DNA of 64,000 bases, from NCBI GenBank assembly GCA_964106645.2, contig OZ067039.1. One strand, 5' to 3'. Position 1 is the stretch's first letter, and every line of letters begins with the position of its first letter. Made by a program: the position numbers and the translations under genes. This document shows positions 28,050 to 63,347 of the stretch, piece after piece. The DNA is from Podarcis pityusensis. Its lineage: Eukaryota. Below the pieces are notes generated by a model, which searched no databases, was not told the DNA's origin, and saw only the letters and a program-made list of their open reading frames with translations.

Positions 28050-28394
28050 TATGTCCAAATTTGTTTTATTTCCCTCTTCCAAAAACATCATAAATTTCCA
28101 ATGCTTTCTCCTTTGAAGTGAACATGTAAAGTCTGACTTTAATTCCCTACCATTCAGGGCATGGATAGAATGAAATGTAGCATTGACATCCTCAAGCCAT
28201 TTTATGTCTATTGGGAAGAAATACAGGAATCACCTTACATTGTTATGCTTATTTGAAATTGGATAGTTCATACTTCCTCGTTTCTGATGGCGAAAAGGCC
28301 ACACTACTGATCTGCATTGATTAGCAGAGCTAGCTATGAATGAAAAGGAAATAATGGATTCGCCTGATACTTACTGAATGTAACTAGCCTCTAT
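28050..28394 (-). other. Gene A terminal exons: 20-nt exon 28394-28375 and 3' UTR exon 28283 to ~28050
   Basis: ttttaacacag / gtaagt micro-exon; 91-nt intron with a gctaat branch-like site and ccttttcgccatcag acceptor; AATAAA at 28070-28065. Confidence 0.55.
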
Positions 28395-28761
28395 CTGTGT
28401 TAAAACGGAAAGTGGAGCTTTTGTTAGCATTCCATGGTTAACACCCTGTGCCACTGCCTGTTCTTCCTTTAAAACAGTGGTACCACATGCACAAAACTGC
28501 TCACTGTAAACACAGCCCTGTCAAACCTACAGCGGTGCATTGTAGACCGACTTCATAAATTGAAGGCAAGTAGAGACGGGCTGAGACAATGCATGAAATG
28601 TCACCAGTTGTCATTAACCTCAACATTTTCAGGACTCTCCCCTTTGAGTATTTATGCCCTGGCAGCTATATCTACTTTAGATCCCCTGCCCTGCATCGCC
28701 TCTCTCCAACGCCCATCTCTTTTCATTTTCTCTTTACTCTCTTCTTAAACTCACCATTTTC

Positions 28762-28844
28762 TTACTTTCCCCAAAATGACAAAGTCCACTTGTTCTTCAT
28801 AGCACCAACTGATTCCAAACCTTTTGCAAAGATGTCAAACAAAG
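28762..28844 (-). CDS. Gene A helix exon: ALFDIFAKGLESVGAMKNKWTLSFWGK-stop
   Basis: Acceptor gcttttcttccag; only the phase-1 frame is open; alternative donors AA|gtaaga and ATG|gtgagt (exon end 28755). Confidence 0.75.
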
Positions 28845-28936
28845 CTGGAAGAAAAGCTTTCTGACGGCCATGGGTGGTCTCTGGATTGGGAGGAAAATGA
28901 GAGCTCGTGAGCCACACCTTCTCTGGTTTTTCTTTC

Positions 28937-29090
28937 TTAAGAACATAAGAAGAGCCTGCTGGATCCTGTTCTCCTAGTGACCAACCAGACACTCCTGGGC
29001 AGCTTGCAAGCAGGACACAAGCCTTCTTGCCCCTTGTGATTCCCAGCAACTGGCATTCTGAGGCAGGCTGCCTCTGATACTGGAGGCATT
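28937..29090 (-). mobile_element. L2-like LINE 3' tail (representative; others near 13207, 20690, 26100, 34975, 63370)
   Basis: TAAGAACATAAGAAGAGCCTGCTGGATC terminal motif. Confidence 0.6.
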
Positions 29091-30252
29091 CCTTCCTTTG
29101 TACCTCTGTGTGTGTGTGTCAGCTCCCCAGACAACAGATCAAATGTTACTAGCACTAATCCAAATGTTGCACTACTATTGGCACAATGTTATATGTTCAC
29201 ATTATATATGAGCACCGCTTCTGTGGGCTGGTCTTCCAATTCTGTAAAAAAAAAAAGTTCTAGCCCATTTGTTCATTGCTTTGTGTTATTCGCTGTGGAG
29301 ACATATGAAGCACTGGATTTCTGAAGCAATGTTCTGCTTTGGACCCAAGGCAACATGAATCATGCAGTGACCCATTTTTCAAAGTGTGATCAGAATGGAA
29401 TCTTGCCTGTCATACACATGGCCAACCATCACACCAAGTCACCAAATCATATTTATAACAGTGGGTACAAAGCAGATGGTAGCTGCAGCCAGTTGATTGG
29501 AAAGGAGACCGAGTCCTACCCTCCCCAAGCAGATGATGGGAAATATCAAAGTTCATTATGCAAATCCTCTTTCACTGCTATTGCTGGTGGACCTCAATGA
29601 GCAACGTCACCATGGTGCTGACTGTGCAATATTCTCATCTTGTGCAACCTGCCATGCACAAAGAGAACATACTTTCCCCATGCAGGATTGGGGTAACTTG
29701 TGCAGAACATGCTCATTGCACAGATATTCAGAATTAACCTCACTATGCTCAAAGGGAGTTATTCCAGGTTAGAGTCATAGCATTGCAGCCTAAGAACAAT
29801 TCACAAAGCATGAACTAGCAACTTGTTTTGGGGAGATGGTGTGCTATTATAAAATCAAAAAGTCAAAATGGATCCCCATGATAACATATTTCCAGAATAC
29901 AAATACCATAGCCAGCCATACAGATCCATGAACACAGCACTAATAAAGTAGGAATGGTGAATAACATCCATCATCCTGAGCAGTAGCCATGCTAGCTGGG
30001 ACTGCTGGGAGTTGGAGTGCACCAACATCTGGAGGGCCACTGGTTCCCCATCGCTGTCATAAAAGTAAATCGCTCCACAGGCTTATGATACACATTAGTT
30101 GTAGGAGGAGGGGAAGTTGTACCAGAAGTGGAGGGAGAGTTGTTATCTGGGAAAGGGAAAGCAAATCATTCCCCTATCACCATGTTGCTGTGGATAAGTT
30201 GTGTGCTATGATTCAGATACTTGCTTAAATTGCTGGACCAAGAAGAACTCAC

Positions 30253-30285
30253 CGTCACTGGCGGTGCTCGCTTCTGCAGAAATCG
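30253..30285 (-). CDS. Gene A exon 3c: TISAEASTASD (older paralogous copy)
   Basis: 33-nt phase-1 exon, cttcttatttacag / gtgagt; flanks are similar to those of 3a/3b. Confidence 0.75.
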
Positions 30286-30459
30286 CTGTAAATAAGAAGG
30301 CATGGCAACATGAAACAGAATTCCTCTAATACCCAGACACAGAGGGCAAAACTTCAACCATTCCTGCAAGAATTCTTCAGTTCTGAAGAATACTATTCCA
30401 TTTCCCCCAACTTCCAATAAAAGAAACACGCAATTATTTTACGCCCACAGCTGAGTTTG

Positions 30460-30926
30460 CAGCTAAGTGTTTAGAATGGCAGATGTTATGCAGTATGCTA
30501 GAAAGCACCGCCATTCGACTTCCAAAACATTCGAAAACCAAAGCGTGGCTTTTGATTGGCTGCAGGAAGCTGCTGCAGCCAGTCAGAAGCCACAGAAGCC
30601 CTGTTGGATGTTCAGCTTCCAAAAATAGTTCGCAAATCAGAACAGTCACTTCCAGGTTTGCAATGTTTGGGAGCCAAAACATTTGACTCAAAAAGGCGTT
30701 TGAAAACCAAGGTACAACTGTAATTCCTCAGGCTCTTAAGAACTGTTACTTAGAGCACATTTGTAAGCATATACAGTCGTGCCTTGGAAGTTGAACGCCT
30801 TGTGAGTCAAATGTTTTGGCTCCTGAATGTCACAAACCCAGAAGTGGCTGTTCCAGTCTGAGAACTATTTTTGGAAGCCACACTTTGGTTTTTGAATGTT
30901 TTGGAAGTTGAATGGACTTCCGGAAC
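30460..30926. mobile_element. Two degenerate Tigger-like MITE fragments
   Basis: ...CCAAGGTACAACTG-TA and TA-CAGTCGTGCCTTGG... ends with mutually inverted internal sequence. Confidence 0.65.
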
Positions 30927-31633
30927 TGTGAAGGAAAAGCTGAAGGTTTTTTACACACAAGATATTAGGCAATCCATGAATCATTGTTCTCTCCACAATT
31001 GTATTTAATTAAAGTAAAACATCATTTTGAGAACTATCTATATGATTTACCAATCTGTTCACTTAGGAAGGCATTTGTGGCTCTGAGTTTTCAGACAATG
31101 CCCTCAGAGTATTTAGATGGTTGCTGCAGGAAAATTCTAGTAGAAAAGAGACTTTCTCTACGTGGCACTCAAGCAACAGAAGACCTATACTGTTAAGTAC
31201 TTACTGTCCTATGTATTCTGAGCTGAAACCTAAGTACATTTGTGAACTATTGTGTAAGATGCCTGATGTGGACTATCAATTGAAGGTCACATATTTGCCG
31301 TCTGGCTCTGATAAGTTTGAGACAGACAACATGGCGAGATTCATTGTTGCATCCCCAAAACTAAGAATGTGCATTAAAGACAATATGGCAAACTATAAAA
31401 TCTGATCAATGATGTAATATAGAAATGTATTTGTGTAGGTCTGCATTTCAAAGTATAGATGTATAAATTGGTTACCACTGTATTTAACAGTGTATCTATG
31501 CATATTCTGCACAATATCCATAGAATACTTATATTCCCTTTTTGTTTAAAATAACCAGGATGGTTGCAACAACAAATAAACTTTGACTTCAACTTTGAGA
31601 TACTTTGAAATTGCTGGACCAAGAATAACTCAC

Positions 31634-31666
31634 TGTCACTGGTGGTGCTCACTCCTGCAGAATCTG
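31634..31666 (-). CDS. Gene A exon 3b: TDSAGVSTTSD (identical copy of 3a)
   Basis: 33-nt phase-1 exon, same splice sites as 3a. Confidence 0.72.
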
Positions 31667-31802
31667 CTGTGGATAAGAGGACATGGCAGTATGAAACAGA
31701 ATTCCTCCAATACACAGAATAATACACAGTTCAATATTTGAATTTTTCCTGCAAAAAGTATTCTTTAATTTCCTCCCAACCTCCATTAAATGGCCAGTGT
31801 CA

Positions 31803-33194
31803 AAGAAAAATGGAATCCAAAATTGATTTTCAAAGATGAGGAGGGAAGATACATAGCAGTAGAAATTACAGCACAAGGGGGAAAATACTTGTTATTGGGA
31901 ATTTATGCACCTAATGATGGCAAGGCAGAATTCTTTAAGAATTTGGAAACAAGGCTTATGGATCATTTGGATTACAAATTAATTCCAATGGGAGATTTGA
32001 ATGGAGTTGCATCTACTTTAATGGATAGGAGACAGAGACAAAAAATACTGAATGCCGGCAGATTACCTAAGATTTTTTATATATATAACTGACAAATTTG
32101 ATCTGTCAGACATATGGAGAGTCAGAAATCTAACTGAAATCTAACTGAAAAAGACTTCACATTTTTTCAGATACAAATCAATCATTTTTGAGAATCGACT
32201 ATTTATAGATATCCAGAGAAATTTCTCACCTTCTCACCCCTTGCCTTTTCCTGTAAGACCTATTACAGTCGTTAAGAGTCGTCAGCAGGCTCATCTCAGC
32301 TATCTGCCAATCTCCCATTCCCACCACCCTTCTGAGTAATACCCCTCCCCATATAGAAGGATCTGGCAACTTCTGTTTCAGTGTATCTGAAGAAGTGTGC
32401 TTGCACACGAAAGCTCATACAAAGAACTAACTTAGTTGGTCTTAAAGGTGCTACTGGAAGGATTTTTTTTATTTTGACTATGGCAGACCAACACGGCTAC
32501 CTATCTGTAACTGTGTCCCAAGGTGAAAGACTTCTGGGGAAAGATTCATAATGAATTGAAAAAAATGTTGAAATATTCATTTATTAAGAAACCAGAAGCC
32601 TTTATACTTGGAATAATAGGTTTGGAATTGCCCAAGAAAGATGTCAGATTATTTTTGTATGCCACAACTGCAGCTAGAATTTTGTTGGCCAAAAATTGGA
32701 AACTACAAGAAGTACCAACAGTGGAGGAATGGCAGATGAAGATGATGGACTTTTGGGAGCTAGCTGACCTGACAGGAAGAGTCCGCGACCAGAAGGATGA
32801 GGAATACCAAGAGGAATGGAAGAAATTAAAAGATTATTTAGCTAAATATGTTAAGAAAATTTAAATAGAATGACTTGCGAGTATCAGGTAGGCCTAGGAT
32901 TTAAATATGTGATGTTCTAGAATACTATGTTAAAAGTTAAAAAGAAAAGAAAGAAAGATGTAAATTGGTTAAGTAAATTTTATGTGAAATTAGTTTAGGA
33001 AAACTGCTACAATGATTTATATGGAAACTCAGCCGGGGGGATTTGAGGAAGTCACCTAACAATGTTTACAAAAGTGGAACTATTACAGTTAGGGTATATG
33101 TTTGTTTGTTTGTTTGATGGTTTCTTTTTATGTTTGTTGATAAGTTTGTTATAAATGTGGAAAACTAATTTAAAAAATTGAAGGGGGGAAAAAA
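31803..33194 (+). mobile_element. L1/Tx1-type LINE, internally deleted (endonuclease piece + ORF2 C-terminus + 3' UTR/A tail)
   Basis: DEEGRY...IYAPN...MGDLN endonuclease motifs; CPKVKDFW...TTAARILLAKNWK C-terminus; Penelope piece at the junction. Confidence 0.85.
32225..32512 (+). mobile_element. Penelope-like element terminus
   Basis: TCTGAAGAAGTGTGC..GCACACGAAAGCTCATAC...TTAGTTGGTCTTAAAGGTGCTACTGGA terminal motif. Confidence 0.75.
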
Positions 33195-33274
33195 CAGGAT
33201 GGTTGCAACAACAAATAAACTTTGACTTCGACTTTGAGATACTTCCTGAAATTGCTGGACCAAGAATAACTCAC

Positions 33275-33307
33275 TGTCACTGGTGGTGCTCACTCCTGCA
33301 GAATCTG
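33275..33307 (-). CDS. Gene A exon 3a: ADSAGVSTTSD
   Basis: 33-nt phase-1 exon, ctcttatccacag / gtgagt. Confidence 0.75.
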
Positions 33308-33606
33308 CTGTGGATAAGAGGACATGGCAGTATGAAACAGAATTCCTCCAAAACACAGAACAATACACAGTTCAATATTTGAATCTATCCTGCAAAAAGT
33401 ATTCTTTAATTTCCTCCCAACCTCCATTAAATGGCCAGTGTCATACACTAGAGAGTGCCATCTGTCTGGAAAATTCTACATGTGCAGGATTTTTATTACA
33501 TATTATGTGGATGGACTAGATCTATCACAGTCACCATGAGCTGCACTTTCCAGTCACTGATCTGTGCTTTAAAGCTCTGTGTTGAAGTGGTTTGGGTTTT
33601 TTTATC

Positions 33607-33727
33607 CCAGTGCTTTCCCCAGGAAAACCCACATTTAGCAATGAATTAGAACAAATAATGGCAAACCAGATTGCTGTTTGCTCCAATTCAGTGGTAAAGT
33701 GCAGGTTTTCCTGGGGAAAGCACTGGG
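33607..33727. mobile_element. Small palindromic MITE in gene A intron 2
   Basis: CCCAGTGCTTTCCCCAGGAAAACC...GGTTTTCCTGGGGAAAGCACTGGG inverted repeat. Confidence 0.7.
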
Positions 33728-34230
33728 ACAAAAAGAACCCCTCTCAGACACAGAACTCTGGATGAGCCTCATGACAGCAGGCCAAGGTGCAACACAGAAA
33801 ACCACATTAAGTAAGAGGGCAATGTGTGTACTAACCAAGTTGGACTGGGGCAAATGTCTTTAAGATCAATGCATGAGATCTCTTTTCAGAGAACATGAAC
33901 TACAAACCTGTCAGGATTTCTCTCTCCATCTCTCTCTCTCTCACACACAGACAGGTGGTTGTATAAATTTATAAATTTGCAAAGCCACAATTTACTAGTC
34001 AACCCTGTCTCACCCAAAATGAAAGCCATCAAAGAAGAAGTCTTCAAGCTTAGCATTAATAAAACATAAAGGCAAAATCTCCTTCTGATCCTCTGATGTT
34101 CACCACTTGTAGGAATAGTCTGTGAAGATATATTAAGCATTTAGGGTGGGGGTGATGTTGTAGGTTGGGAGCACCATCTGCCTGGGATTTTTTTTAGCAC
34201 TGTCTGATTTAAATACAATGCTAGATGTGT

Positions 34231-34232
<2 letters not shown>

Positions 34233-34262
<30 letters not shown>
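34233..34262. repeat. (AC)n microsatellite
   Basis: Direct reading. Confidence 0.97.
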
Positions 34263-34264
<2 letters not shown>

Positions 34265-34794
34265 CTTTATTCAGATGGACAGTGAACGTCATGCTTAAAT
34301 CAGCCAACACCAACTTCTGCATGCCAGGTATCTGTAGCCTGAGTGCCTACATGATGGCATCCTGATGCTTCTCATGGACTGTGTAGCAGTGACCCATATT
34401 CCACAGGCAGCTGGCCATGTGGGATCCTACTCAAGTTTTCCAAACAGATGTATCCTCATGTATAAATCAGGCTTGGCAGATGTGCCACCCTTTCTTATGT
34501 GAATCGGGACTTCTTTTGTTTCCCCTCTCACTTTAGAGTGGCTACTGTGCAGGCAGTCTGATGATTATAAAGTGAGTCTGCTATGACTGCCTATGCAGAA
34601 AATAAAGAATAACTCTGCCTGGATGACTCTATGGTGATGATCTAGATATACAAGTGCCCTAGAATCTGGATCCGCCATGGCATTCTGCTGCCCTCTTAAC
34701 GCAGTTACTACAGTCACATTGTCCCAAGGAATATTCTACTGGGCAAATTATTCAAAAGGCTCAAGTGCACATGCTTAAAATGTTCAACACTTAC

Positions 34795-34836
34795 CAGTGC
34801 TGGGAGTCAACTCAGTGCTGGGAGGAGGTGATGTCT
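34795..34836 (-). CDS. Gene A exon 2: ETSPPPSTELTPST (mucin-like)
   Basis: 42-nt symmetric phase-1 exon, ttctgtcctcattctag / gtaagt. Confidence 0.78.
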
Positions 34837-35476
34837 CTAGAATGAGGACAGAAGATCTCACAACTATTATCCTGAATAATGCTAAATGCTCACTTGTTGA
34901 AACTAGCATTTTCCTCTGTGTCATTCAAACCTTTGCATGCCTAGCTGATGTGAACACAGCTCATTGAAATAAGAAGAATTCTGCTGGATCTTACCAAAGG
35001 TCCATCTAGTCCAACATCCTTTTTCTAACTTTGGCCAGCCAGTGCTTCCAAGAAGTCCATAAACAAACAAGAAAGGCCTTAACCCTCTTCTGTAGTTTAT
35101 GGCCAGTGTGCAGTCCTCAGCTGTAAACTACTTATGCTCCTGGAAGTTCTATTTTCTTATCATTGGTAACTTCATAGATGTCAGCAGATGTATCCTCATT
35201 GAATTTGCCTAAACCAGGGATGCGGCCCTTCATATATGTTGCACTATGGCTCCTGTCATTCATCTCTATACTAGCTGAGGCTGATGGGGATTGCTGTCCA
35301 AAAACATCTGGAGGAGTACAGGTTCCCCATCACTGTCTGAAACCATTATTGGAGCCACCTTAGCTTGTGCATCATAGCTATCACTTGGGGGGGGTATGAA
35401 TTCCATCCTTTATTTATGGAATTCGCCCCAAGGAGGAGGGAAACACACTGGGCCATTGAGAATTACATACCTCCAG

Positions 35477-37159
35477 GACTTCCGGGTTGGCGCCATCGCC
35501 GAATGGCGGACTCCCTCTGAGCTCCGGAGGGAGCCTGCTCGGCAGGGGCTGGGTCCTACCGCACCGGCGATGCGGGGACCCTTAAAAACCACGGCCACGG
35601 AGGCCGTGGACATGGAGACTCGGCTGGCACCGCTAGCGCCCTCCCGACTCGTGAAGGAGCCTTTTTAAAGGCTACGGATCGGGTGCCGGGGAGAAGCGTG
35701 GTGCTTTGAGTCCTCTGCTATCCCTGCCGAGCGCAGCCGCATGCCATCCGGCGGAGAGCGCTGACTTCTTCCATTGAAAATTCGGACTTCTTAACAACAA
35801 CCCGTGAGTAATTTGGAAACCGGGTTTAAAAGGAGAAAAAAAAAAGAATTTTTTTTTCGGATTGGACACGAGCGGGGGGGGATCCAAAAAGGAAGTCAGT
35901 CCCCTCCCCTATTGTAAACCTTCCAAAACAAGGACGGGGAAACCAAGGTCCAAAAAGATGTGTATTGCTGATTAAAACTAAGAATTCCACGATGGGGAAC
36001 TATAAGAACTGTGCTGGAGGAAGAATCGAGGGAGAAGAAACGTAACCCCCCCCCCCTGGGAACCGGGGTGATTGAAGAGAGAGCCTGGTGAAAAGAGTCG
36101 GAGATTTTGACAGCTGTCAAAGTAGCTGTCAAAGTCGGAAAGCAGAGAGGATTTTATTATGCGAACTTTCCTGGTTAAATTTGTTACAATTTGCTATAAC
36201 TCGTTAAAACTTGGATACAAAATGGCGAAATCATGGATAACAATCGGACTTTTGGACTAGAGAAAACAAAGTTACAACAATCCCCCTAGAGGAGTTTTGG
36301 GACATTACAAAGATGGTCGCAAGTGGAAAAATACCATTGGAATTTTACAGGACTGGTTATCTTCTGGGAAAGCTGCAAAACGGAAATAATATTTTGTCTA
36401 CAGGGTGTTTAGCTAAAGGAGACAATAGAATTTTCTATTGAAGAAAGGAAGGGACTGAACGCAAGTTTTCGTTCCTGAATAATAATAATCCCTGTAGAGT
36501 TACTAAGCTTCTGAATTAGAACGTTTCAGCAGCGGAACAAGAGGAAACTGGACTACAACTTGGAAAGAACAATGGGGGGAGTTTTATTAAAGATTTGAAG
36601 TTAAATGTTTTAAAAAATAATTATAAAAAGAAAAAGCTAGCAAGGAATTGGGGGAAATAGGTGATTTATGGACTTTAAGAATTCCAGGCAGATAATATGG
36701 TTTGGTGGTCAGGGGGAAATTAAACCGGGGACAGGGGGGGGGAGAACTAAAATCCAAAGGCTTGTCAACTTTTTCTTCTGAATGAGCTTTTTTTTCATCT
36801 ATTATACTTTTTATTTCTTATTTTTTATATTTCTATTGTGTGGGGTGTCTTTATCATTAAAAAAAAGGGAAATTGTGGAATGAAAATGGGGTGGGCCCTG
36901 GGGAGAGAATTTTTGTCTTTTATTAAGGGTATTGATGAGGAGTGTATAAATTTTAAATTCGAATAATGGTCTAAACAAATTAAGTTTCAAATTAGAACTG
37001 AGAGCTTGTGGAGCCAACAATATGAAAGGGGAATACGGTAGGGGTGGGGGAAGGGGGGAGTCCCGGAAAGTGGATGTATGAAAATAAGGCTTTGAATGTA
37101 CTTTAATCTTTACTTTCCGTATTTTTGAAAATCTTAATAAATATCATTTAAAAAAAAGA
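35477..37159 (+). mobile_element. Non-autonomous L1-type retroposon (1.7 kb) with 19-bp TSD
   Basis: Starts GACTTCCGG with a CpG-rich head, ends AATAAA..A-tail; TSD GAGAATTACATACCTCCAG at 35458-35476 and 37160-37178; no long ORF. Confidence 0.8.
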
Positions 37160-37172
37160 GAGAATTACATAC

Positions 37173-37221
37173 CTCCAGACACTAGAGCGCAAACCAGCAG
37201 GAGTCCCCATATCATCTTCAT
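37173..37221 (-). CDS. Gene A exon 1: signal peptide MKMIWGLLLVCALVSG
   Basis: ACCATGA start context (in-frame upstream ATG at 37227), hydrophobic core, small residues at -3/-1, phase-1 donor GAG|gtatgt; CATAAG box at 37313-37308. Confidence 0.8.
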
Positions 37222-37850
37222 GGTCATGAATGACTTGGGAGGTTTTCAGGAATTCAGGGCAGCCTAAAGAAGCCGAGGAATGTTGTGGTCTGATCCACTC
37301 TCACTGGCTTATGAAGGAAGGAAACGCCAATGAAAATGGTTGGGTAGTGGGGAGTGGAATCGTGGAGGAAATCAGGATCCTGGTGATGAAACAATTGGAC
37401 ATATAAATTGGACAGATAACAATTGGATAAATATGCAAACAGAAGAATTAAGATGGCACACAGCACTTGTGGCACATGAGAATAGACACAATGTTAATTG
37501 GTCTTCTAGATAAAGGGAGAGGCAAGGAAATTAATTGCTGTACCAAGGCTTTCTAATCTGTTTACTCAGAAAAGGGATTTTGGCTTTCTTCTTTCTGCCT
37601 CTGGCAAATCCTGGCTGAGGCGTGGACGGTGGTATCTTCTCCTGATGCACCTCACTTTAGGCTTCTCAAAGGGTGTGAAAGCAAATGTATGGCTTCTAGA
37701 CAACGTGGCACAAATGTGGTTTGATGTTTGTGGAGAATTCAGGCTCCTTGAAAATATCGTATTTCACTTAAAGGAAAAATATGTCTAACTCCAATACCTG
37801 CAAATAGATGTTTGAAAATGTAAAAAAGAAAAAGGAAAAAAGGAAAAAAA

Positions 37851-38015
37851 AGAGGTAAGGGACCCCTGACAGTTAAGTCCAGTCGCAGACAACTCTGGGG
37901 TTGCAGTGATTATTTCACTTTACAGGCCGAGGGACCCTGCATTTGTCCGCAGACCTTCTGATTGGCAAGCCCAAGAGGCTCAGTGGTTTAGACCACAGTG
38001 CCTCCCGCATCCCCA
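37851..38015. mobile_element. Sauria SINE, internally deleted
   Basis: AGGTAAGGGACCCCTGACAGTTAAGTCCAGTCGCAGAC...GGCAAGCCCAAGAGGCTCAGTGGTTTAGACCACAG. Confidence 0.75.
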
Positions 38016-39584
38016 TTTGAAAATGTACCTATCTTAATTCTCAGAATGTGACTGAGGAGTGGGATTATTATTACCAGTAGGAGGTGCCTGGTGCTGCCCA
38101 GGATTTTTTATAATAAAAAAAAAAGTTGTTGTTGTTGTTTAAAAAAGCAGGCAAAAAGCAGGCAAAGTCACACCAAAGTCACATTTGGGTCTTCCATATT
38201 GATTCAAAATGGCAGCCAGAGTCTAAACATCAATGAAGAGCACCACCCCCACCTCAGGAACCCTTGTGCAAAGTTTGGTGGTGGTATCTCGAGAGGGACC
38301 TGAAAGTATAAAGAACAAAGAACGAAATGGAAAGAGAAACCACTTTCCAAAGTATATGGTAGATTATGATTATCATTATGAATTGCATTTATAGCCCTCT
38401 TTTTTCTCCAAGGAGCCCAGGGTGGCATACATGGTTCTCCTCCTTCTCCTTTAATCCCCATAACAGCCCTGTGAGGTTGGATCAGGGTGCAAGATTTGCA
38501 GGGCCCAGGAGGCATTGAAGCCACAGCTGGCATCTCCTTCTCCATTCATGCCAACATTGCTGAGGCTTACCTGGAATTATTTACCTGGAACATAAATATA
38601 TTTAAGTTCCAGGTAAATATCCAGGAACTGTTTTGTTATATCCAGGAACTGGAAATTTTAATCTTAAATCCAAATAGGAGTGTGGCATTGCTCTCATTCA
38701 CTTAGCATATACAAGAGGCAGTTAATATGACCGTTACAGCCTTGCAGTGACAAATTCCTGCAGGGTAACTATGAAAGGCTGCTAGAACAAAAACAACTGA
38801 GTCTTGTGGGACTTTAAAGACTTGCAGATTTACCACAAAGAAAGAAAGAAAATCTTCTCTCCAATCTGGAATTGGGTGCAAAGTACCACCCATCAACTGC
38901 CCTGGTAATCCTGATGCTCTGCTTGGTAGAATAACTGGAGCCAAGGCATATTCAACAATAGGAATAGGGAATCTGTGGCCCTTTAGATGCATTACGGTGG
39001 GTCATGCTAACTGGAGCCAATGCAATTTGGAGTCCAATAACATATGGAGGGTCACAGGCTTCTAATCCCTGCTCAACCACCCCAATTTAAAAGGACATCC
39101 CGAAATTACAAAAGCTACCCCTAGCTTCTGATTAAATCCCAGAATGTCCCATTTTTGGATCCAGCACCCTGGCATGAGCCAGCTGGCTCTTGAGAAAGCT
39201 TGGGAGCAAAAAAACCACCCCAAGCATCTTGATTTGGATCAGCAAATTGGAAGGGTATGTTTGGCTTTCAGGAGCCAGATTTGTGGATAATGGCCAATTT
39301 GTCATGTCCTGGCTCCACTCCAGTTTATGTAAATGGTGGCATTCATCCTCAGGGCATCCTGTATTTATTTATACACACTGACTGTTTTCTCCATAATTAA
39401 CATCATTATGATGCAATATCTCAACTAAACTCGTAATATTTCTCTGCTAGCTCCTTTGATTGGTTTCTGTCACTTACATAAAGTCAGCAGTGTAGGTACT
39501 CTGCTCAGTGTCAATCAGTATTCTGGCTTCATCACAGCATCTTGAGTGTCAAGAAACATTGAGGCTGCTGTCTGTGTTTCTGCA

Positions 39585-39645
39585 ATGAAGACTCTTTGGA
39601 TCCTTCTCCTGCTGGCAACTTCCACTTGGGCTTTTGTTGCTGTGG
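39585..39645 (+). CDS. Gene B exon 1: signal peptide MKTLWILLLLATSTWAFVAV
   Basis: GCAATGA start, hydrophobic core, phase-1 donor G|gtaagt; CATAAA box at 39477-39482; shares MKxxWxLLL with gene A. Confidence 0.8.
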
Positions 39646-40197
39646 GTAAGTAGAGAGGGGCCACCCAGCAAGTGTTTCTTATTTGGGGTGTTTTCTGACC
39701 TGCTGTGAGAAACCTCTACAGGTGTCCAGTATGAAAGAAACAGTTCTGTGTTTAGTGACCATGCCAAATGTTTTTAATTACCTGATTTGAAACACAAATC
39801 TGCCCAGCTCATAATGCTCAGGTATTATGCGCTGCGCTGCCGGAGCACAATTTCTGTTCTCATCCTGAAGCAAAGTTCTTAACCTGAGGTACTATTTCTG
39901 GGTTAGCAGAGTCTGTAACCTGAAGCATCTGTAACCTGAGGTACCACTGTATATGCATTAATATTATAACCCAGGAGAGAAAACACACACACAAATTCTT
40001 TACAAATGCTTGCTAAAATAGCTCATAGACACTGGGTCAATTCCAAGCTAACTCTTGAGGGATTTTATCATGGGTAGTTGAACACTGGTGATTTTTTTCC
40101 AGAGATGGGGGGAAATTGTATTTTGTTTGCATTTTAATGTGAAACTGCCTAATTTATACAAGCAGAAGTTCAATTATCCTTCAACATTCACACTTCT

Positions 40198-40337
40198 GGG
40201 ATAGCTCAGTTGATGGATCACAAAACGCTTACTCAGGTTCATGGGTCTGAGCCCCCCATTGAGCAAAATATTCACACATTGCAGGAGGTTGGGCTAGATG
40301 AGCCTCATGGTCCCTTCCAACTCTATAATTCTAAGAT
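40198..40337 (+). mobile_element. tRNA-derived SINE with CR1-like tail
   Basis: GGGATAGCTCAGTTG A-box-like head; ...GGTCCCTTCCAACTCTATAATTCTAAGATT tail. Confidence 0.7.
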
Positions 40338-40589
40338 TTGCACGTCTCCAGGTTTTGCAATGCCATTCTCCAACCAAAAAATGTGTACAAAATTCTGGGA
40401 AAGTGAAAATGAAAATGCACAGACAAGTGAAAACAACATAGTCAAATGCATTGCATTAGGGGAAATTTCTTGTAAAAATGTATATATTTGCCCAAACGTG
40501 TATTTTAGGAGAAAGATGCACTGAAATGCTGTCTTTCTGTGAACTTTTTTTATTATTTAAAAAAGAACATTTACACCCATCTCGTCTAG

Positions 40590-40634
40590 ATTCCAGCAAT
40601 GCTCCTCGAGAGTCGCGATCCAGCTCCGCTCCTG
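40590..40634 (+). CDS. Gene B exon 2: DSSNAPRESRSSSAP
   Basis: 45-nt symmetric phase-1 exon, catctcgtctag / gtaagc. Confidence 0.75.
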
Positions 40635-40831
40635 GTAAGCAGATTGACACCCCTGGTGGGAAGGGCACTGAGCCTAACTTGGTGACTGATGTTAATGTGT
40701 GTGGAAATCCTAAAAAGTAGGTCCACTGTAAGATGAACTAGAAACAAAACAGCGTAATACATGGGGAGGTGAGCAGACACTTTTTGTGCTAAGCAATCCT
40801 GCAAATGGCTGGGAAATCTTCTATAGCTCAG

Positions 40832-40879
40832 ACTCTGAGCCAACTACTGAAACGTTAGAGACAGAGACAGCACCTCAAA
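40832..40879 (+). pseudogene. Gene B candidate exon 3: DSEPTTETLETETAPQ, donor apparently mutated (GGAAGA)
   Basis: 48-nt phase-1-compatible Thr/Glu-rich segment after ctatagctcag, followed by ggaaga instead of gtaaga. Confidence 0.4.
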
Positions 40880-41105
40880 GGAAGAAAATAGTGAAAGATT
40901 TAAAAAATAATATTTCTGAAACAACCCCCCATCCCACCACATCTCATCTCAAGCTTTTGGAGTTGAAGGGGCAATTGCTGGGGTGGGGAGGGAGCAGGGC
41001 TGTCCAGTGTGGGAATCAAGCCATTTGAAGCAATTCACAGAAGGGACTAATTATTATTTTTTCCATGGCACCCAGGGGCAATTTCTGGACGCGCATTCCT
41101 CACAG

Positions 41106-41189
41106 ATCTGGCCGGTGTGCTTGGCAGTACCTCTGAAGTGTTTGGTGAACTTTTCACTCAAATGGTTACGTCCGTTTTGGGGGGGAAAG
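41106..41189 (+). CDS. Gene B helix exon: DLAGVLGSTSEVFGELFTQMVTSVLGGK
   Basis: 84-nt symmetric phase-1 exon, cattcctcacag / gtaagt; amphipathic periodicity. Confidence 0.78.
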
Positions 41190-41655
41190 GTAAGTGTTGG
41201 AGGACATTGCAAGTGGGGAGCATTTTTCAAAACAAGCTTGTGTGGTGAGCATGAGAGGGGGAAAGTCCCAGTGTGATGTGGAGAGAAGTGGATGAGGTTT
41301 TTTAAAATGCAAACGCAATGCAAGGAAACTGCTCTAGGGCTGCTCAGTCTAGAAGAGCTCATGTGCCAGCAGACAGAGGGTGGAATTCAATGCCATACTG
41401 TGACAAACGTTCTGCCAGGCCCCTGCAATGTATTTTGCACAAGTTCCCACAAGAAAGTATAACTGCTGTGGCCATTTCCACCTTCCATTAAAAAGATGTG
41501 GGTGTGTGGCCTTGGGAGGCTGCGAGGAAGGTAGGGACCCCCCCCCCCCCGAGGGAAGGGAGACAAAGGCAGGGAGAGAGATGCAACAGGATTACTGGGA
41601 GGTGAGGAGGATGGTAATAGTGAAGAAGTTAACCCTGCTGAACTTTTCTTGATAG

Positions 41656-41720
41656 GCACCAGAGAACTGAGGAGAGAGGCTCATGGATCTCCAGGCTCCG
41701 AGCCAAGCAACAGGAACTGA
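41656..41720 (+). CDS. Gene B last coding exon: GTRELRREAHGSPGSEPSNRN-stop
   Basis: 75-nt exon 41656-41730, cttttcttgatag / gtaagc, TGA at 41718-41720. Confidence 0.65.
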
Positions 41721-41912
41721 TTAGCCATGGGTAAGCAGCTCCAAGTCATAAGGTACTGGGCACTATCTGGAGGGCCACAAGTTTCCCATTCCTTGCTTGA
41801 ACTTCTGCCCCAGACATGAAATGAAACAACAGCTGTCCAGTCCTTCAGTTTCTTCTGTATGGTGAATGTTGCTGTATTAAGAATGTTGACTTTAAGTCAT
41901 GTTCAATTTCAG

Positions 41913-42290
41913 ATATTTGCAGCAATGGTACAATTGGACTTCTGCATGGTCTAGAGCAGTCCTTTCCAACAGGTCGGTCGTGGGATGTCCCTGGTCCTGG
42001 TCGATCCTGGTCGATTGCGGGATCCTGATGCCCCACCCCCACCCCCAAAAAAGCAGCTCAACAACTTTGGCTCATCCCCCCCCCCCAAAAAAAGCTCAAG
42101 AACTCTGGTCAATCCAATGGGTAGATCACTGTCATTTTTTTTATAGTGGGAGTAGATCGCAGTCTCTTGGAAGCTGGACAGCCCTGGTCTAGAGAATGAA
42201 GGAGGCTTTGACATCCTGGTGTTTGCCATCCTGGTAGATTGCCACATATCTATACCAATTGATCAATAAAGTTCTAGTCAAGCAAATCAT
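41913..42290 (+). other. Gene B terminal (3' UTR) exon containing a hAT MITE
   Basis: Acceptor gttcaatttcag, AATAAA at 42265-42270. Confidence 0.5.
41957..42186. mobile_element. hAT (Charlie-like) MITE with 8-bp TSD GTCTAGAG
   Basis: TSD at 41949-41956 and 42187-42194; imperfect CAG.. TIRs. Confidence 0.85.
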
Positions 42291-45985: not shown

Positions 45986-46680
45986 CTACCTCAACTCTGT
46001 CAAGATGTCCATACCGTTCTCCCCTCTGGTGGGTGAGTCCCTTTCTGCTGACCACTCCCCAAGGGATTCTTCACTGCTTTCCTCTGGAGATGAAACCACT
46101 TCTAGAGAATGGTGTCCATAACAGTACAGTTCTTGATGGCCAAGGTGGTCTGGCCCCTCCATGCTTTCTCCGCAGTGAGAAAGCCACGGTTCCAACTTTG
46201 AATGAGATGTAGCTTGAGGGCAGTAGTGGGAAGAAATCACAGGAGTCAGCTCCACTATGGTAGACTCTGAAGAGTCACTTCCCATTCTGCCATGATGAAA
46301 GGGGACTTCAGGGAGCGCTGTGTGAGTCTCATCCTTCACGCCTTCCACATCAAAGTGGAACTTGTCTCTGCGGGCTTTTTCCATCACTTCCCACACTACC
46401 TGTTCCAGACGACTCATAGAAGATGGCACAGCAGAAGGTCCTTGAGGCCCTCCTCGGGCGGAAGTGTACAAGCACATCGTGGAAATGGCTTTTTGCAAAC
46501 GCTTGAGAGGAGGCAGAGACTCTGGCTGGGAAGGAACATTCCAAGAATCTGGGATGTCTGGGAAAGCCCAGAACAAGTGGGCAGGGGAAATCTTTTGGAT
46601 GGGAGTCTTAGACACATAAGAGTAGAGGCAGAAGAAAGCATCAGCCGTTACAGCCAGAGTCTGGACTTGCTTGAACCGAC
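45986..46680 (-). CDS. TESPA1: TESPA1 coding exon 8 (SRFKQVQTLAVTADAFFCLYSYVSKTP...), to TAG
   Basis: Acceptor ctttcacag; conserved RFKQVQTLAVTADAFFCLYSYVSKTP. Summed CDS is 1362 nt = 453 aa + stop. A weak donor (AG|gtagca, 45990) overlaps the stop, so a further exon cannot be excluded. Confidence 0.88.
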
Positions 46681-47076
46681 CTGTGAAAGGAAGGATAGAA
46701 AGTGTCAGAGGAAAACCAAGAGACCCTAGCTTCCAGCTCTTCCAGGTCACATCTGTATGGCAGGGACTGTACACACACCTGAAAACTAGGCCTGGTTTCA
46801 TTTTCCTGGGTTCTAGTTTTTTTTTTCTGTCTTCCTCTTGCCTAAGCAAAGGCTTTTGTTTGGTCCTGTCTTCTGCTCCTGGTCCCAGTTCTACCTGCTT
46901 TCCTATGTTCCATCAAGAACAGAGGTCCTTTCCCATCACCTGCTACCTGAGCTCTTTTCAGATTTCAACCAAAGATGCCAAGGGTTGAACATGGGAGCTT
47001 CTCTACATGCTCTGAGCCTCACCCTTTGATATCACAGTCCCAGAACTGACAGCCATGAAATGCTTGTGGCACTTAC

Positions 47077-47285
47077 TTGCTAACATCAAGCAAGGATCCT
47101 CCATCTCTAACCGTTGCACCTGGGCTCTGAGGAAGAGCTGGAAATCAATGCCCTCAGCTTGGGAGGGAACGGAGAAGAACCGAGATGGGATCCAAGATGC
47201 AGCCTGTGTCTCCTCTTGTATGAAGCCCAGGTTGCACAAGATGCTCTCAGCATCAGCTTCATAGAGATCCAGCACCTCAGAGATG
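47077..47285 (-). CDS. TESPA1: TESPA1 coding exon 7, KRAP/IP3R-binding domain
   Basis: SISEVLDLYEADAESILCNLGF...IPSRFF...PSQAEGIDFQLFLRAQVQRLEMEDPCLMLA; cctag / gtaagt. Confidence 0.95.
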
Positions 47286-47757
47286 CTAGGCAGAGAAGAT
47301 AAGAGTGTGAATGCAGAAGTATCCCAACTGATTACTGAACCATTTTCAGGTCATAGCCCCACAAATACACCACTAGGTATGTCCGCAAGCCCCTTTCCTT
47401 CAGAGAATAACGGGCAGCATCTGTGGGATTTCCTCACCCCCAATTTATCTTCCTCACAGCCTTGTGTGGTGAAAGAGGGTGCTTGCAATAATATTCATGG
47501 TGGTGTCTGGTAGAGAAAGCAAACACAGAGCCCTCTGTATGTTGTTGGACCATAATTCCCATCAGCCCCAGCCTGCTCAACTAACCGTCAGGGATGGCGG
47601 GAGCTGTGGTCCATGACATCCAGAGGGCACCAGGTCAGCTGCCTCCAATGTACAGACCAGAGGCTAGGTATCTCTGCTCCAATCACTGCTGGTTTGTTAG
47701 TGGTGTAGGTAGATCTTTAAGCCAGTCCAAGTCCTACACAATACAATCCATGCTTAC

Positions 47758-47856
47758 CTGGAGCTGGTCTTGTTAGTGCTGCCTGAGAAGGCACTGGAAG
47801 TCATGCTGTGATCCAGATTGAGATGTTGGGAAGGCCAGAATGTATGTTTTTGGGAC
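47758..47856 (-). CDS. TESPA1: TESPA1 coding exon 6 (SQKHTFWPSQHLNLDHSMTSSAFSGSTNKTSS)
   Basis: 99 nt, NAGNAG acceptor cacagcag, donor gtaagc; TNKTSSS motif. Confidence 0.9.
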
Positions 47857-48168
47857 CTGCTGTGGAAGAAGAGACAGTGAAGAGACACATCTGCATGCAT
47901 ACCCACATCCCTTTTGGTGTGCATGTAGGAAGACAAAAAGGGAGGGCAAGCTGGCAGTCACAGCCAGCTGCACACTTGCACAAGACTGATAGTGTGACAA
48001 CACCCTACAATGTTATTAGACAAATATGCAGCCAGTATCTCATTTCAGAAATAAAACTAGAAATCTCAGCCCCGCCCTGCCCCCCCAAAACAAATTTAAA
48101 TTCTGGATTTCAGATTTCTCCAAACTTTGGCTCTAGCAACGCTAACCTCCTTAACTCTTGTTTCTCAC

Positions 48169-48205
48169 CTAGGCTCAGCTCTGTCTCTGTCCAGTAGCAC
48201 CATTG
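48169..48205 (-). CDS. TESPA1: TESPA1 coding exon 5 (AMVLLDRDRAEP)
   Basis: 37 nt, ttcttctttccag / gtgaga; phase 1 to 2 keeps the frame. Confidence 0.82.
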
Positions 48206-48383
48206 CTGGAAAGAAGAAAAGAAAGGTCTCTCATGAGCAAAGGATACATTGCATTCCTACGAAGAGAGCTGACGGCCAAGGAGCATATTGGCAGAGTTGC
48301 ACCATCAAATTAGCATTTTGCCACCCATCCATGGGCCATCTGGAAAGAAGGCTTGCTCACACCCAACAATCCTCATCACTTAC

Positions 48384-48437
48384 CTTCTGCTCCCAGGCTA
48401 AGGTCATCTTCAAAGCTGGTTCTGTTGCTGCAGGATC
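48384..48437 (-). CDS. TESPA1: TESPA1 coding exon 4 (GSCSNRTSFEDDLSLGAE)
   Basis: 54 nt, cctgtag / gtaagt; SFEDDLxLGAE motif. Confidence 0.92.
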
Positions 48438-48967
48438 CTACAGGATAACACAAATACATAGTCACTCAGAGCAAGCATCCACAGGTGGAAAAGGGACTGG
48501 GTGAGACCAAAAGGCTGAGTGGCTTTCTCTATGCAGTTTTATTATGGACATGCCACAACACAGCTCTACATGGGCAGGGCTGTGTGAAGGCTACAGTTCC
48601 ACAGAAGAACAGGAAATCCAAACAGTGTAGAATTCAGCTTCCTAAAATGCTCAGATTTTTCTTTCTTTCTAATCCCTGTGAAAATAGGCTTGTAAGTTTG
48701 CAAGCAATGCCTGCTGAAATCTCAGAAACCTAATGAGTTTCTGAATAAGATTTCCAGCGAAGGGGGGAGCAGTTTAATGCCTTGTATACCCCCTTGCTTT
48801 CCCCCTCAAATTAGTATGTATTATTGTTTAATTAACTTATGAATCACTTTACAAAAGCATTGTAAGGCGAATTACAAGCAAACAATAAAAATAACTAAAG
48901 TAGGTTTTGAAACAATACCAGAAACAACAGCGGCTGCCTTTCAATATTTTTTAGAGAAAACATTGAT

Positions 48968-50020
48968 GACTTCCGGTGCTTTCTGCCTTAATGGGTTCAG
49001 CTCCCACATTAGCGGAGATCATTTGCAGAGAAAAACAAAGATGATTTTGAGGGTAATTGTCCTTGCAAGTTCCCCCCAGGGCTCGGGGGGACTGAACTTC
49101 ACCCGCAGACCGTTTTGGCTCTCGCTCCGGCATGGAATCTGGGAGGCAGGAAGATGCTGGGTGCCAAAGCACTTTGCCTATCGGTAACTCCCCGACACAG
49201 CCATTAAGATGCAGAGGCTCTTCTATTTAATAGGGTGAAATTGACTCTAATTTACAGACGTGTGCAGGATGGATGGGACAAGATTATAAACTGGCAAGTG
49301 AATCAGCTACTGAGTCGCAATGTTTAGAACTGGTAAGATTTCCTTTGTAGAAAAATATGGTATGTGAGGGGGGGAGCCTTTTATATATACCATGTTTGCT
49401 ACATAAATAATTCGGCAAACCTCCCCCTAAATGCCAACAAACTGATAAAAAGCAAGAGGAGAAAAAGAGAGTGGGGTTATATTTATGCATTAATATGAAA
49501 ATATAACTGTGTGAGAACATTGAAATGATTTAAAGCACTGGACTTCCACTTATCACAATTTGGACTATGGGCCGAAATTACATGGGAAAAGAGGAAGAGA
49601 AAGAGCAAAAAAGTGTAAGTAGAGATGCTGCGTACAACATGATCAGAAGAGGAAAAATGAAGAAACAAATGGAAAAATAAACTTCTCACACAGGGAATTT
49701 ACGGGATATAGAACTCCTTCTGCAGAAATAAAATTTATTAAATGTGTTAATACGAATGGAAGTCCAGAACTCTGTAGTTGTTGATAACAGACTACGATCA
49801 GGACTGAATGTAATTGGATTAATCAAGATTTCGGAAGCAGGAAGAAATAATAACTTTGCACTTTGAAACCCAGCACACGGGAAGTCACACAAATTGTATA
49901 ATTGGCCTTATAATTTATATATATTTGGATATGAATTGTAATTTGACATTGATAAAATGTGGCTGCTATTGGACTTTAGTAATTGAAAATTAATTGATTT
50001 ATTTTTTTTTTGAAAAATAG
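48968..50020 (+). mobile_element. Second GACTTCCGG-headed non-autonomous retroposon (older)
   Basis: Same 5' motif and CpG head; imperfect TSD AAAACATTGAT / AAAACATGGAT. Confidence 0.6.
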
Positions 50021-50708
50021 AAAAAACATGGATTGGTTGATTGATTGATTATATTTCTATGTTGCTTTTCATTCAAATGAATCCCAATACAGCTTACAAA
50101 CAATAAAAAAAAGAACATCACAAATACAGCATAAATTATATAGAATAATTAACAAATCATCAATAAAAACAAGTACAACCTATAAAACACTCTTAAAGCA
50201 TCAACTAAAAAATGAGCTAAACATCACAATTAAAGCAAAAGTAATATTATATGATTAACAAACCAATACAGCATTTATAATCTATAAAATAATATCAACA
50301 GCATTAACAAAATAGCAACCCAAAAATAAGCTAAGAACTGTTAAGGTCATACACACATTCTCCACACCCCTAGGGCTCATAATCTTTCACTCTGTTCAGC
50401 TCAATAACATACACATGACGCCCTTCTAAAGGTTCATGAATGAGGCTGTGTACATAACCATACATTAAAGTACATTTGAAGCACACACACCCAAGAACCC
50501 TGGGAACTATATTTTACCTATCAGAGAGCTACAATTCCCAGCACCCTTTAATAAACTACATTTCCTGGGACTTTTTGTTTGGGTGTGCACACGCTCAAAA
50601 TGTGCTTTAAATGTATGGTGTGTGTGTGCAGTCCAAACTTTAGCCTACCTTACTTCATGTTTGAGAAGGCAGACCGAGCAAATAACAGAAATTGCAGAAA
50701 TCACTTAC

Positions 50709-50761
50709 CAGCATAGGCACCCGGAGCAGAGATGCTCTCTGAGAAGGGGTCCAGTGAAGAG
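50709..50761 (-). CDS. TESPA1: TESPA1 coding exon 3 (SSSLDPFSESISAPGAYA)
   Basis: 53 nt, ctttcag / gtaagt; phase 2 to 1 links exons 2 and 4 in frame. Confidence 0.8.
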
Positions 50762-52122: not shown

Positions 52123-52165
52123 CTGCATTCCTGCAGCCAGCTCTCAATCTTATTGGATGAGCTCC
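52123..52165 (-). CDS. TESPA1: TESPA1 coding exon 2 (GSSSNKIESWLQEC)
   Basis: 43 nt, ttccaacag / gtgagt, matches the NKIEDWLQDC motif, frame-consistent. Confidence 0.9.

Positions 52166-63304: not shown

Positions 63305-63347
<43 letters not shown>

What the first reader, a model, noticed from the sequence alone, without database searches (positions are those of the whole stretch)
28050..42290. Hidden head-to-head pair of small secreted-protein genes: candidate lizard members of the dermcidin/lacritin/MUCL1/GLYCAM1 cluster
Seen: two micro-exon genes missed by the ORF track, with canonical splice sites and phase-1 introns throughout the coding part. Gene A (-), 90 aa: MKMIWGLLLVCALVSG|ETSPPPSTELTPST|ADSAGVSTTSD|TDSAGVSTTSD|TISAEASTASD|ALFDIFAKGLESVGAMKNKWTLSFWGK. 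Gene B (+), 84-100 aa: MKTLWILLLLATSTWAFVAV|DSSNAPRESRSSSAP|(DSEPTTETLETETAPQ)|DLAGVLGSTSEVFGELFTQMVTSVLGGK|GTRELRREAHGSPGSEPSNRN. Both have CATAA boxes, MKxxWxLLL signals, similar helix-exon 3' ends (TTTTGGGG..AAA(G)gtaag), a non-coding last exon with AATAAA, and a stop <50 nt from the last junction (should escape NMD). Established (from recall): in human, LACRT(-), DCD(-) and MUCL1(+) lie directly 3' of TESPA1(-) and encode signal + Ser/Thr/Pro-rich + (for DCD, LACRT, GLYCAM1) amphipathic-helix secreted gland proteins, described essentially from mammals. Here the order is A(-), B(+), TESPA1(-), and gene A shares LESVG with dermcidin. Inference: the family predates the synapsid/sauropsid split and encodes lizard skin/femoral/ocular/oral gland secretions.
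Basis: partly seen in the sequence, partly recalled or inferred. Interest (0 to 1): 0.93.

Follow-up and report, generated by a model that had tools for sequence, protein, structure and literature searches.

The report
Lizard relatives of milk antimicrobial genes
Two small unannotated wall-lizard genes, together with a matching bird gene, appear to belong to the gene cluster that makes antimicrobial proteins of mammalian milk, sweat and tears, so this supposedly mammal-only cluster probably predates mammals.

Summary
Both genes have intact, gene-like structures in this Podarcis genome; expression was not shown. All introns between coding exons are AG/GT and phase 1. Gene B keeps its frame in Zootoca and Lacerta, and its mature-peptide exons change about twice as fast as flanking DNA. 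Corrections: optional exon B2b has no donor; both helix exons probably start 30-36 nt earlier (A 102 aa, B 94 aa). TESPA1 flanks of ten other species gave a chain of evidence. Two birds carry a gene of the same exon plan in the same interval; the swan helix exon picks out lacertid B3 first among 11,159 candidate exon ends. The bird signal exon is 74% identical in DNA to a platypus gene at the MUCL1-like position, and that gene is PlatAMP/EchAMP, a milk antibacterial protein published as monotreme-specific. One inversion links sauropsid and mammalian gene order. Best reading: an amniote-wide cluster of secreted gland prepropeptides releasing a C-terminal helix (homology 0.8; antimicrobial role about 0.5). 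No direct match to dermcidin or lacritin was obtained, blind HMM searches fail, and the tissue is unknown. Earlier scan notes concern this window only.

The parts
37308..37331 (-). Gene A core promoter: ATTGG element and CATAA (TATA-like) box
   Evidence: Sequence. Promoter plus exon 1 differ at 2 of 158 bases from Zootoca against 6.4% background (P 0.002). The 10-nt box core is also in the swan promoter.
37173..37221 (-). Gene A exon 1, signal peptide (16 aa, phase-1 donor)
   Evidence: Protein identical in Zootoca. Ranks 2 of 6,201 ATG starts against the swan signal exon.
35477..37159 (+). L1-like insertion in A intron 1; its 19-bp target-site duplication (35458-35476, 37160-37178) includes the exon-1 donor
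   Evidence: Absent in Zootoca; duplication read. L1 identity is inferred from the GC-rich start and poly-A end.
34795..34836 (-). Gene A exon 2, 42-nt Ser/Thr/Pro micro-exon
   Evidence: 7 of 13 residues S/T; weak match to swan exon 2 (p 0.05).
33275..33307 (-). Gene A exon 3, 33-nt Ser/Thr micro-exon
31634..31666 (-). Gene A exon 4, copy of exon 3 inside a 253-bp duplication (31550-31802 and 33189-33443) that flanks an L1-like fragment
30253..30285 (-). Gene A exon 5, older copy of the 33-nt micro-exon
   Evidence: (79-84% identity to the other copies).
28755..28880 (-). Gene A helix exon: acceptor 28880 (alternative 28844), stop 28764-28762, donors after 28766 and after 28755
   Evidence: helix over residues 9-37; best non-self exon-end match in the window is B3, 1 of 2,171.
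28065..28394 (-). Gene A 3' non-coding exon or UTR with AATAAA at 28070-28065 (acceptor uncertain; 28394 is one candidate)
   Evidence: inferred.
39457..39483 (+). Gene B core promoter: ATTGG element and CATAA box
   Evidence: aligns with Pogona, where the box reads TATAA.
39585..39645 (+). Gene B exon 1, signal peptide (20 aa, phase-1 donor)
   Evidence: Kept in Zootoca and Lacerta. Pogona ortholog scores 154 against a null maximum of 53.5.
40590..40634 (+). Gene B exon 2, 45-nt Ser-rich micro-exon
   Evidence: Splice sites and frame kept in two lacertids; 13-20% substitutions.
41076..41189 (+).
   Evidence: helix model, pLDDT 82; best match to swan exon 3 among 11,159 exon ends.
41656..41730 (+). 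Gene B exon 4: short tail, stop at 41718-41720, donor after 41730
   Evidence: Frame and stop kept in two lacertids; the donor is GC in Zootoca.
42147..42290 (+). Gene B 3' end with AATAAA at 42265 (last acceptor uncertain)
   Evidence: Poly(A) region conserved in lacertids and Pogona.
45986..63876 (-). TESPA1 coding exons (synteny anchor)
   Evidence: 98% identical to Podarcis lilfordi TESPA1; exon map.
2979..3974 (-). NEUROD4 coding exon (synteny anchor)
   Evidence: Pfam Neuro_bHLH and HLH; 77% DNA match to the swan gene.

Best explanation
A and B are head-to-head paralogues from an inverted duplication and are lizard members of an amniote-wide cluster of small secreted exocrine-gland prepropeptides that lies 3' of TESPA1. 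In mammals the cluster holds EchAMP/PlatAMP and, by position, MM1, MUCL1, GLYCAM1, LACRT and DCD. Shown: gene structure, conservation, synteny and the similarity chain lizard-bird-platypus. Inferred mechanism: the signal is removed, the Ser/Thr spacer is O-glycosylated, and a helix of about 30 residues is cut free after a basic residue and trimmed, possibly amidated, at its Gly-Lys end. It would then act at a skin or mucosal surface, most likely against microbes. Homology about 0.8; processing model about 0.55; antimicrobial role about 0.5; tissue unknown.
For: Synteny: birds read PPP1R1A, TESPA1, interval, NEUROD4; the window reads TESPA1, B, A, NEUROD4; platypus has NEUROD4 head-to-head with TESPA1. 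One inversion converts the orders, and the mammalian cluster is reported beside TESPA1 (PMC5054531). Exon plan: swan 58/33/129/8, platypus 58/45/93/74, B 61/45/114/65 nt, all phase 1; swan and B both have a donor just after the stop and a downstream AATAAA. Sequence: donor-anchored test puts lacertid B3 in the top six places of 11,159, reverse ranks 1, 1 and 2 of 7,246, and A6 finds B3 first of 2,171. Swan and platypus signal exons match at 37 of 50 bases without gaps, z 10.7, HMM E 0.001. The platypus gene is EchAMP/PlatAMP: ASG-AK cleavage site, 14 basic and 14 acidic residues, forward primer 17 of 20 (PMC3541144). Selection: no coding indels against about 3 expected per species; B2+B3 substitute at 12-16% against 6.2% (P 5e-4, 2e-5, 5e-3). 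Lacerta has Gly-Lys-Arg and swan Gly-Lys-Lys at the helix end. DCD and lacritin release bactericidal C-terminal fragments (PMC7948570).
Against: No read, peptide or tissue evidence. Blind HMM searches do not link lizard and bird exons. Direct lizard-platypus similarity is weak (DNA z about 3, signal exon only), and the EchAMP mature part shows no match. No Pfam, PDB, Atlas or protein-database hit. Hydrophobic moment is above shuffles only in swan (p 0.003), not in the lizards (p 0.09-0.32). The B helix is net acidic. The anchored test was designed after the match was seen, the three lacertids are not independent, and the competing hits in bird loci include Gly/Leu-rich repeats. A was checked in another species only for promoter and exon 1.
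Confidence: 0.72

Rival explanations
1. Same family, but the lizard proteins serve chemical signalling (species or identity cues in femoral or cloacal secretions) rather than defence.
For: Fast, mostly non-synonymous change in the mature exons; acidic B helix; several Podarcis femoral protein spots are unidentified (PMC6557888).
Against: Birds lack femoral glands (own knowledge) yet keep an intact gene. Pogona B has lost its start codon and internal exons. None of the peptides listed matches A or B, though that search used a restricted database.
Confidence: 0.25
2. Same family, working as a small mucin or surface-film stabiliser (lacritin- or MUCL1-like) in ocular, oral or skin secretions, with little bactericidal effect.
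For: Repeated expansion of Ser/Thr micro-exons in A, in skink (five to six copies) and in gecko; lacritin fragments stabilise tear film (PMC7948570).
Against: Basic-residue sites flank the helix and the Gly-Lys end is shared with swan; accelerated evolution is less expected of a lubricant.
Confidence: 0.2
3. The lizard genes are real but arose independently of the bird and mammal genes; shared position and phase-1 introns are coincidence or common features of secreted proteins.
For: Blind HMM searches fail; a phase-1 intron after a signal exon is common (own knowledge); lizard signals lack the Ala-Gly-x-Ala-Cys core shared by bird and platypus.
Against: Reciprocal top ranks in the donor-anchored test; same exon plan including a donor just after the stop; B-oriented micro-exon genes at the same place in skink, gecko and anguid.
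Confidence: 0.13
4. A and/or B are silent remnants.
For: No annotation in lacertid RefSeq loci; A carries two L1-like insertions, one at its first donor; Pogona B is broken.
Against: Intact frames and splice sites in three genera, constrained A promoter, excess of substitutions without indels; one probable RNA run holds 0.15 of the region's words against 0.01-0.03 background.
Confidence: 0.07

Closest known systems
EchAMP / PlatAMP (monotreme milk antibacterial protein, PMC3541144)
   Same: About 90 aa; signal on its own phase-1 exon; 45-nt second exon; four coding exons; 6-7 kb 3' of TESPA1 in B's orientation; signal exon 74% identical to the bird gene.
   Different: Mature part not alignable to the lizard proteins; no Gly-Gly-Lys helix end; proven milk expression and activity, whereas the lizard tissue is unknown.
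Marsupial Milk 1 (MM1) and eutherian MUCL1
   Same: Short, fast-evolving secreted proteins beside TESPA1 (MM1 about 8 kb away, 98-99 aa; PMC5054531).
   Different: Sequence and intron phase not compared here; orthology to B rests on position only.
Dermcidin and lacritin
   Same: Same locus; signal, spacer and a C-terminal helix released by proteases (PMC1761701, PMC7948570); from recall, same strand as TESPA1, like gene A and the bird gene.
   Different: No Pfam or PDB match from any exon; dermcidin is listed as Haplorrhini-specific (PMC5554394); one-to-one orthology is not supported.
GLYCAM1 / lactophorin / marsupial VELP
   Same: Four exons, mucin-like part, milk antibacterial activity, same human region (PMC5054531).
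   Different: Longer (141-164 aa); no Pfam match.
Amphibian skin antimicrobial prepropeptides (analogy from recall)
   Same: Conserved signal, spacer, hypervariable helix that starts after a basic residue, Gly-Lys end.
   Different: Ser/Thr micro-exon spacer instead of an acidic pro-piece; no dibasic site before the helix; no database match. Works-like only.

Membership tests
TESPA1-linked gland-protein cluster (EchAMP, MM1, MUCL1, GLYCAM1, LACRT, DCD) | Lies directly 3' of TESPA1 in the PPP1R1A-NEUROD4 block | tested here: met
   PMC5054531 for koala and human; one inversion separates the orders.
TESPA1-linked gland-protein cluster | Signal peptide on its own first coding exon, ending in phase 1 | tested here: met
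   49 and 61 nt in the window, 58 in swan and platypus, 64 in potoo. SignalP was not available.
TESPA1-linked gland-protein cluster | Four to six short coding exons joined in phase 1 | tested here: met
   Met against platypus PlatAMP and swan. In potoo the last junction is phase 2, as at the first donor of A's helix exon.
TESPA1-linked gland-protein cluster | Same intron phases in human DCD, LACRT, MUCL1 and in GLYCAM1 | not tested
   No human sequence used; the papers read give exon number for GLYCAM1 only.
TESPA1-linked gland-protein cluster | Ser/Thr-rich, O-glycosylatable spacer | tested here: met
   Spacer exons 40-54% S/T. Glycosylation itself was not predicted.
TESPA1-linked gland-protein cluster | C-terminal amphipathic helix | tested here: inconclusive
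   Helix predicted; hydrophobic moment not above shuffles in the lizards.
TESPA1-linked gland-protein cluster | Sequence homology to a named mammalian member | tested here: inconclusive
   Indirect chain via birds is significant in anchored tests; the direct match is weak and blind HMM searches fail.
TESPA1-linked gland-protein cluster | Expression in an exocrine gland and secretion | not testable with these tools
TESPA1-linked gland-protein cluster | Antimicrobial activity of the protein or its C-terminal fragment | not testable with these tools
   Needs an assay.
Dermcidin or GLYCAM1 protein families | Match to the Pfam model or to a solved structure | tested here: not met
   No hit at E up to 10 for single exons or the helix alignment. 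Short queries limit power; the platypus exons also gave no family hit.
Amphibian skin antimicrobial prepropeptides | Acidic pro-piece ending in a dibasic site before the peptide | tested here: not met
   Spacer is Ser/Thr-rich; the site before the helix is a single Arg or Arg-Gln-Lys.

The most novel reading that the evidence does not exclude
EchAMP, MM1, MUCL1, GLYCAM1, lacritin and dermcidin, each described as lineage-specific, descend from one phase-1 micro-exon gene of the amniote ancestor that encoded a skin-gland antimicrobial prepropeptide. Living lizard and bird members show the pre-mammalian state from which milk, sweat and tear proteins were recruited, and their expression sites would point to the ancestral gland.
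Probability: 0.55. Interest if true: 0.88.

Novelty: new member of a known kind. Interest (0 to 1): 0.76.

Why it matters
Papers treat these proteins as mammalian novelties: dermcidin as Haplorrhini-specific (PMC5554394), EchAMP as monotreme-specific (PMC3541144, repeated in a 2026 preprint) and MM1 as marsupial-specific without homologues (PMC5054531). Sauropsid members would date the cluster to the amniote ancestor, turn several 'orphans' into fast-evolving members of one family, and make the idea that milk arose from antimicrobial skin-gland secretions (own knowledge) testable by asking which reptile and bird glands express them. They also give candidate identities for unassigned small proteins in lizard secretions. 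Ten literature searches found no report of non-mammalian members, but the library lacks most subscription journals.

Tried and rejected
Those bases were masked in my working copy and sent to no search afterwards; they had been part of the earlier run search. The N run at 55313-55487 was left unfilled. No human contig or sequence was fetched. Blank searches: protein database for both helix exons, representatives, Atlas, Pfam, PDB (16, 17, 61; only chance hits in 62, 76). Blind HMM lizard-bird searches failed. Rejected: B2b as an exon; a gecko start resembling B1 at L003:31569, which lies in a LINE (42); a signal-like stretch at window 16275, which has a phase-0 weak donor and looks like a repeat; a gecko stretch resembling A6 at L003:27749, which has no donor (unresolved, 56); a second bird gene on the opposite strand, where only a TAATCC element is conserved. 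The python flank held no recognisable member within 10 kb. Fold search was not run because the models are single helices.
Full report
Setting. The window is from a Podarcis wall lizard: its TESPA1 is 97-98% identical to P. lilfordi and slightly less to P. muralis and P. raffonei. NEUROD4 lies at 3974-2979 and TESPA1 at 63876-45986, both on the minus strand. The two candidate genes lie between them, 6.4 and 8.8 kb from the TESPA1 stop.

Observation. The exons exist as described, with AG/GT ends and phase-1 junctions. A strict scan for signal-peptide exons found only A1, B1 and one weak hit in 64 kb, and micro-exons are enriched (3 against 0.23 expected). There are two corrections. B2b lacks a GT donor in three lacertids and is frame-shifted in Zootoca. 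Both helix exons have an in-frame upstream acceptor: 41076 for B, the only one intact in Zootoca, and 28880 for A. With these, the exons measure 114 and 115 nt to the first donor, both read basic residue then Ala-Phe-Leu near their start, and the proteins are 94 and 102 aa. Both promoters have ATTGG about 14 nt before a CATAA box.

Conservation. In Zootoca and Lacerta, B1-B4 keep frame, stop and splice sites, with no coding indel against about 3 expected in each species (P about 0.05 each). B2 and B3 substitute at 12-16% against 6.2% in flanking DNA in all three pairs (P 5e-4, 2e-5, 5e-3; non-CpG 3e-3, 2e-4, 0.03), mostly non-synonymously, while the signal exon is conserved. This suggests positive selection, but no codon model was run. 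A's promoter and exon 1 differ from Zootoca at 2 of 158 bases (P 0.002); A's other exons lay outside the fetched flanks. Pogona has B's promoter, exon 1 and poly(A) region in collinear order, but the start codon reads CTG and the internal exons were not found. Skink, gecko and anguid each show B-oriented, phase-1 micro-exons and a short last exon in the same interval. Their signal exons lie beyond the 10-kb flank, so these are partial models. The python flank showed nothing.

Synteny. Swan and potoo read PPP1R1A, TESPA1, interval, with NEUROD4 next in swan, as in the window. Platypus has NEUROD4 head-to-head with TESPA1, the order I recall for human. One inversion of TESPA1 with its 3' interval converts one order into the other and would carry that interval to where the mammalian cluster lies (PMC5054531).

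Birds. Both birds hold an unannotated gene in that interval, in A's orientation: TATA-like box, signal exon, a 27- or 33-nt micro-exon, a helix exon, a short stop exon with a donor just after the stop, and a downstream AATAAA. The swan exons were wrongly fused into the RefSeq TESPA1 model. The swan helix exon ends Phe-Gly-Gly-Lys-Lys; lacertid B3 ends Leu-Gly-Gly-Lys. They align without gaps over 35 residues, scoring 37-39 for Lacerta and Zootoca (30 for the window) where the two bird orthologues score 40. Against 11,159 stop-free stretches ending at a donor in eight squamate loci, the swan exon's six best matches were all lacertid B3; in reverse it ranked 1, 1 and 2 of 7,246. A6 found B3 first of 2,171 in the window, supporting paralogy, and ranked the swan exon 32 of 7,246. 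Blind HMM searches did not recover these links, so the sequence signal is weak and depends on exon boundaries.

Platypus. A four-exon phase-1 gene (58/45/93/74 nt, 89 aa) lies 6.9 kb 3' of TESPA1 in B's orientation. Its signal exon matches the swan's at 11 of 18 residues and 37 of 50 bases (z 10.7), is the swan exon's best non-bird match in all loci, and is found by a bird profile at E 0.001. It is PlatAMP, the orthologue of echidna EchAMP: same ASG-AK cleavage site, 14 basic and 14 acidic residues, and the paper's forward primer matches its 5' UTR at 17 of 20 bases (PMC3541144). EchAMP is a milk protein with shown antibacterial activity, published as monotreme-specific. Its mature part does not align with the sauropsid proteins.

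Mechanism. Shown: gene structure, Ser/Thr-rich spacers, predicted single helices. Inferred: secretion, O-glycosylation of the spacer, release of a 31-32 residue helix after Arg or Lys, and trimming or amidation at Gly-Lys; Lacerta (Gly-Lys-Arg) and swan (Gly-Lys-Lys) have textbook amidation contexts. A's peptide would be net +2 and B's net -2. Dermcidin and lacritin release bactericidal C-terminal fragments by proteolysis (PMC7948570). Amphipathicity is significant only in swan. I favour surface defence (about 0.5) over chemical signalling (0.25) and film or mucin function (0.2); these can coexist.

Expression. Not shown. One probable RNA run of a congener holds 0.15 of the words of 37000-42400 against 0.01-0.03 in most other RNA rows. 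A B transcript with unspliced 3' end plus A exon 1 and repeat background would give about 0.13, so this is a hint only. I did not repeat it, masked those bases, and sent them to no later search. The joined models were never searched, the N run was not filled, and no human sequence was used.

Comparison and verdict. The genes meet the positional and structural features of the TESPA1-linked gland-protein cluster, are inconclusive on direct sequence homology and amphipathicity, and fail Pfam/PDB membership of dermcidin and GLYCAM1. They are best filed as new, non-mammalian members of the cluster, not as dermcidin or lacritin orthologues. Searches of the paper library found no earlier report. Interest 0.76.

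Noticed in passing
L006:22209-20570 (-), platypus: The full four-exon PlatAMP/EchAMP gene lies 3' of TESPA1 at the MUCL1/MM1-like position and is not among the called genes of this locus; the 2013 paper lacked its last exon and its neighbourhood.
   Followed up: yes
L008:17588-18790 (+), swan; L007:17641-19480 (+), potoo: Unannotated bird gene of the same plan; in swan two of its exons are fused into the RefSeq TESPA1 protein (P0026 residues 411-459), an annotation error.
   Followed up: yes
L007:15580-15640 and 17495-17510; L008:15203-15247 and 17410-17430: Conserved paired TAATCC-type sites (OTX/PITX class, from recall) just upstream of the bird gene's TATA box, and a second, inverted copy about 2 kb further upstream.
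   Followed up: partly
L002:34745-28584 (-), skink: Array of 24-nt Ser/Thr micro-exons repeated at about 1,008-nt spacing, followed by a last exon with two cysteines near the C-terminus.
   Followed up: partly
L003:31205-26842 (-), gecko: Thr-rich micro-exons with Asn-x-Thr sites and a last exon rich in Trp and basic residues that looks like an antimicrobial peptide.
   Followed up: partly
L009:40220-38530 (-), Pogona: B orthologue with start codon changed to CTG and no recognisable internal exons; a downstream in-frame ATG would give a 15-residue leader.
   Followed up: partly
window 35458-37178: L1-like insertion, absent in Zootoca, whose 19-bp target-site duplication copies the donor of A exon 1; it is antisense to A.
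   Followed up: partly
window 31550-33443: A 253-bp duplication around an L1-like fragment created exon A4 from A3; unusually long for a target-site duplication.
   Followed up: partly
window 58098-63161: Gypsy-type LTR element with gag and pol frames inside TESPA1 intron 1; CR1-type pieces at 55628-57872. Described only.
   Followed up: no
window 15246-15471 and 5566-5764: Non-coding elements conserved with swan upstream of and within NEUROD4.
   Followed up: no
L010:10001-15305, python: The annotated python TESPA1 is only 305 aa, against 430-480 in lizards, and no small-gene remnant was seen within 10 kb downstream.
   Followed up: no
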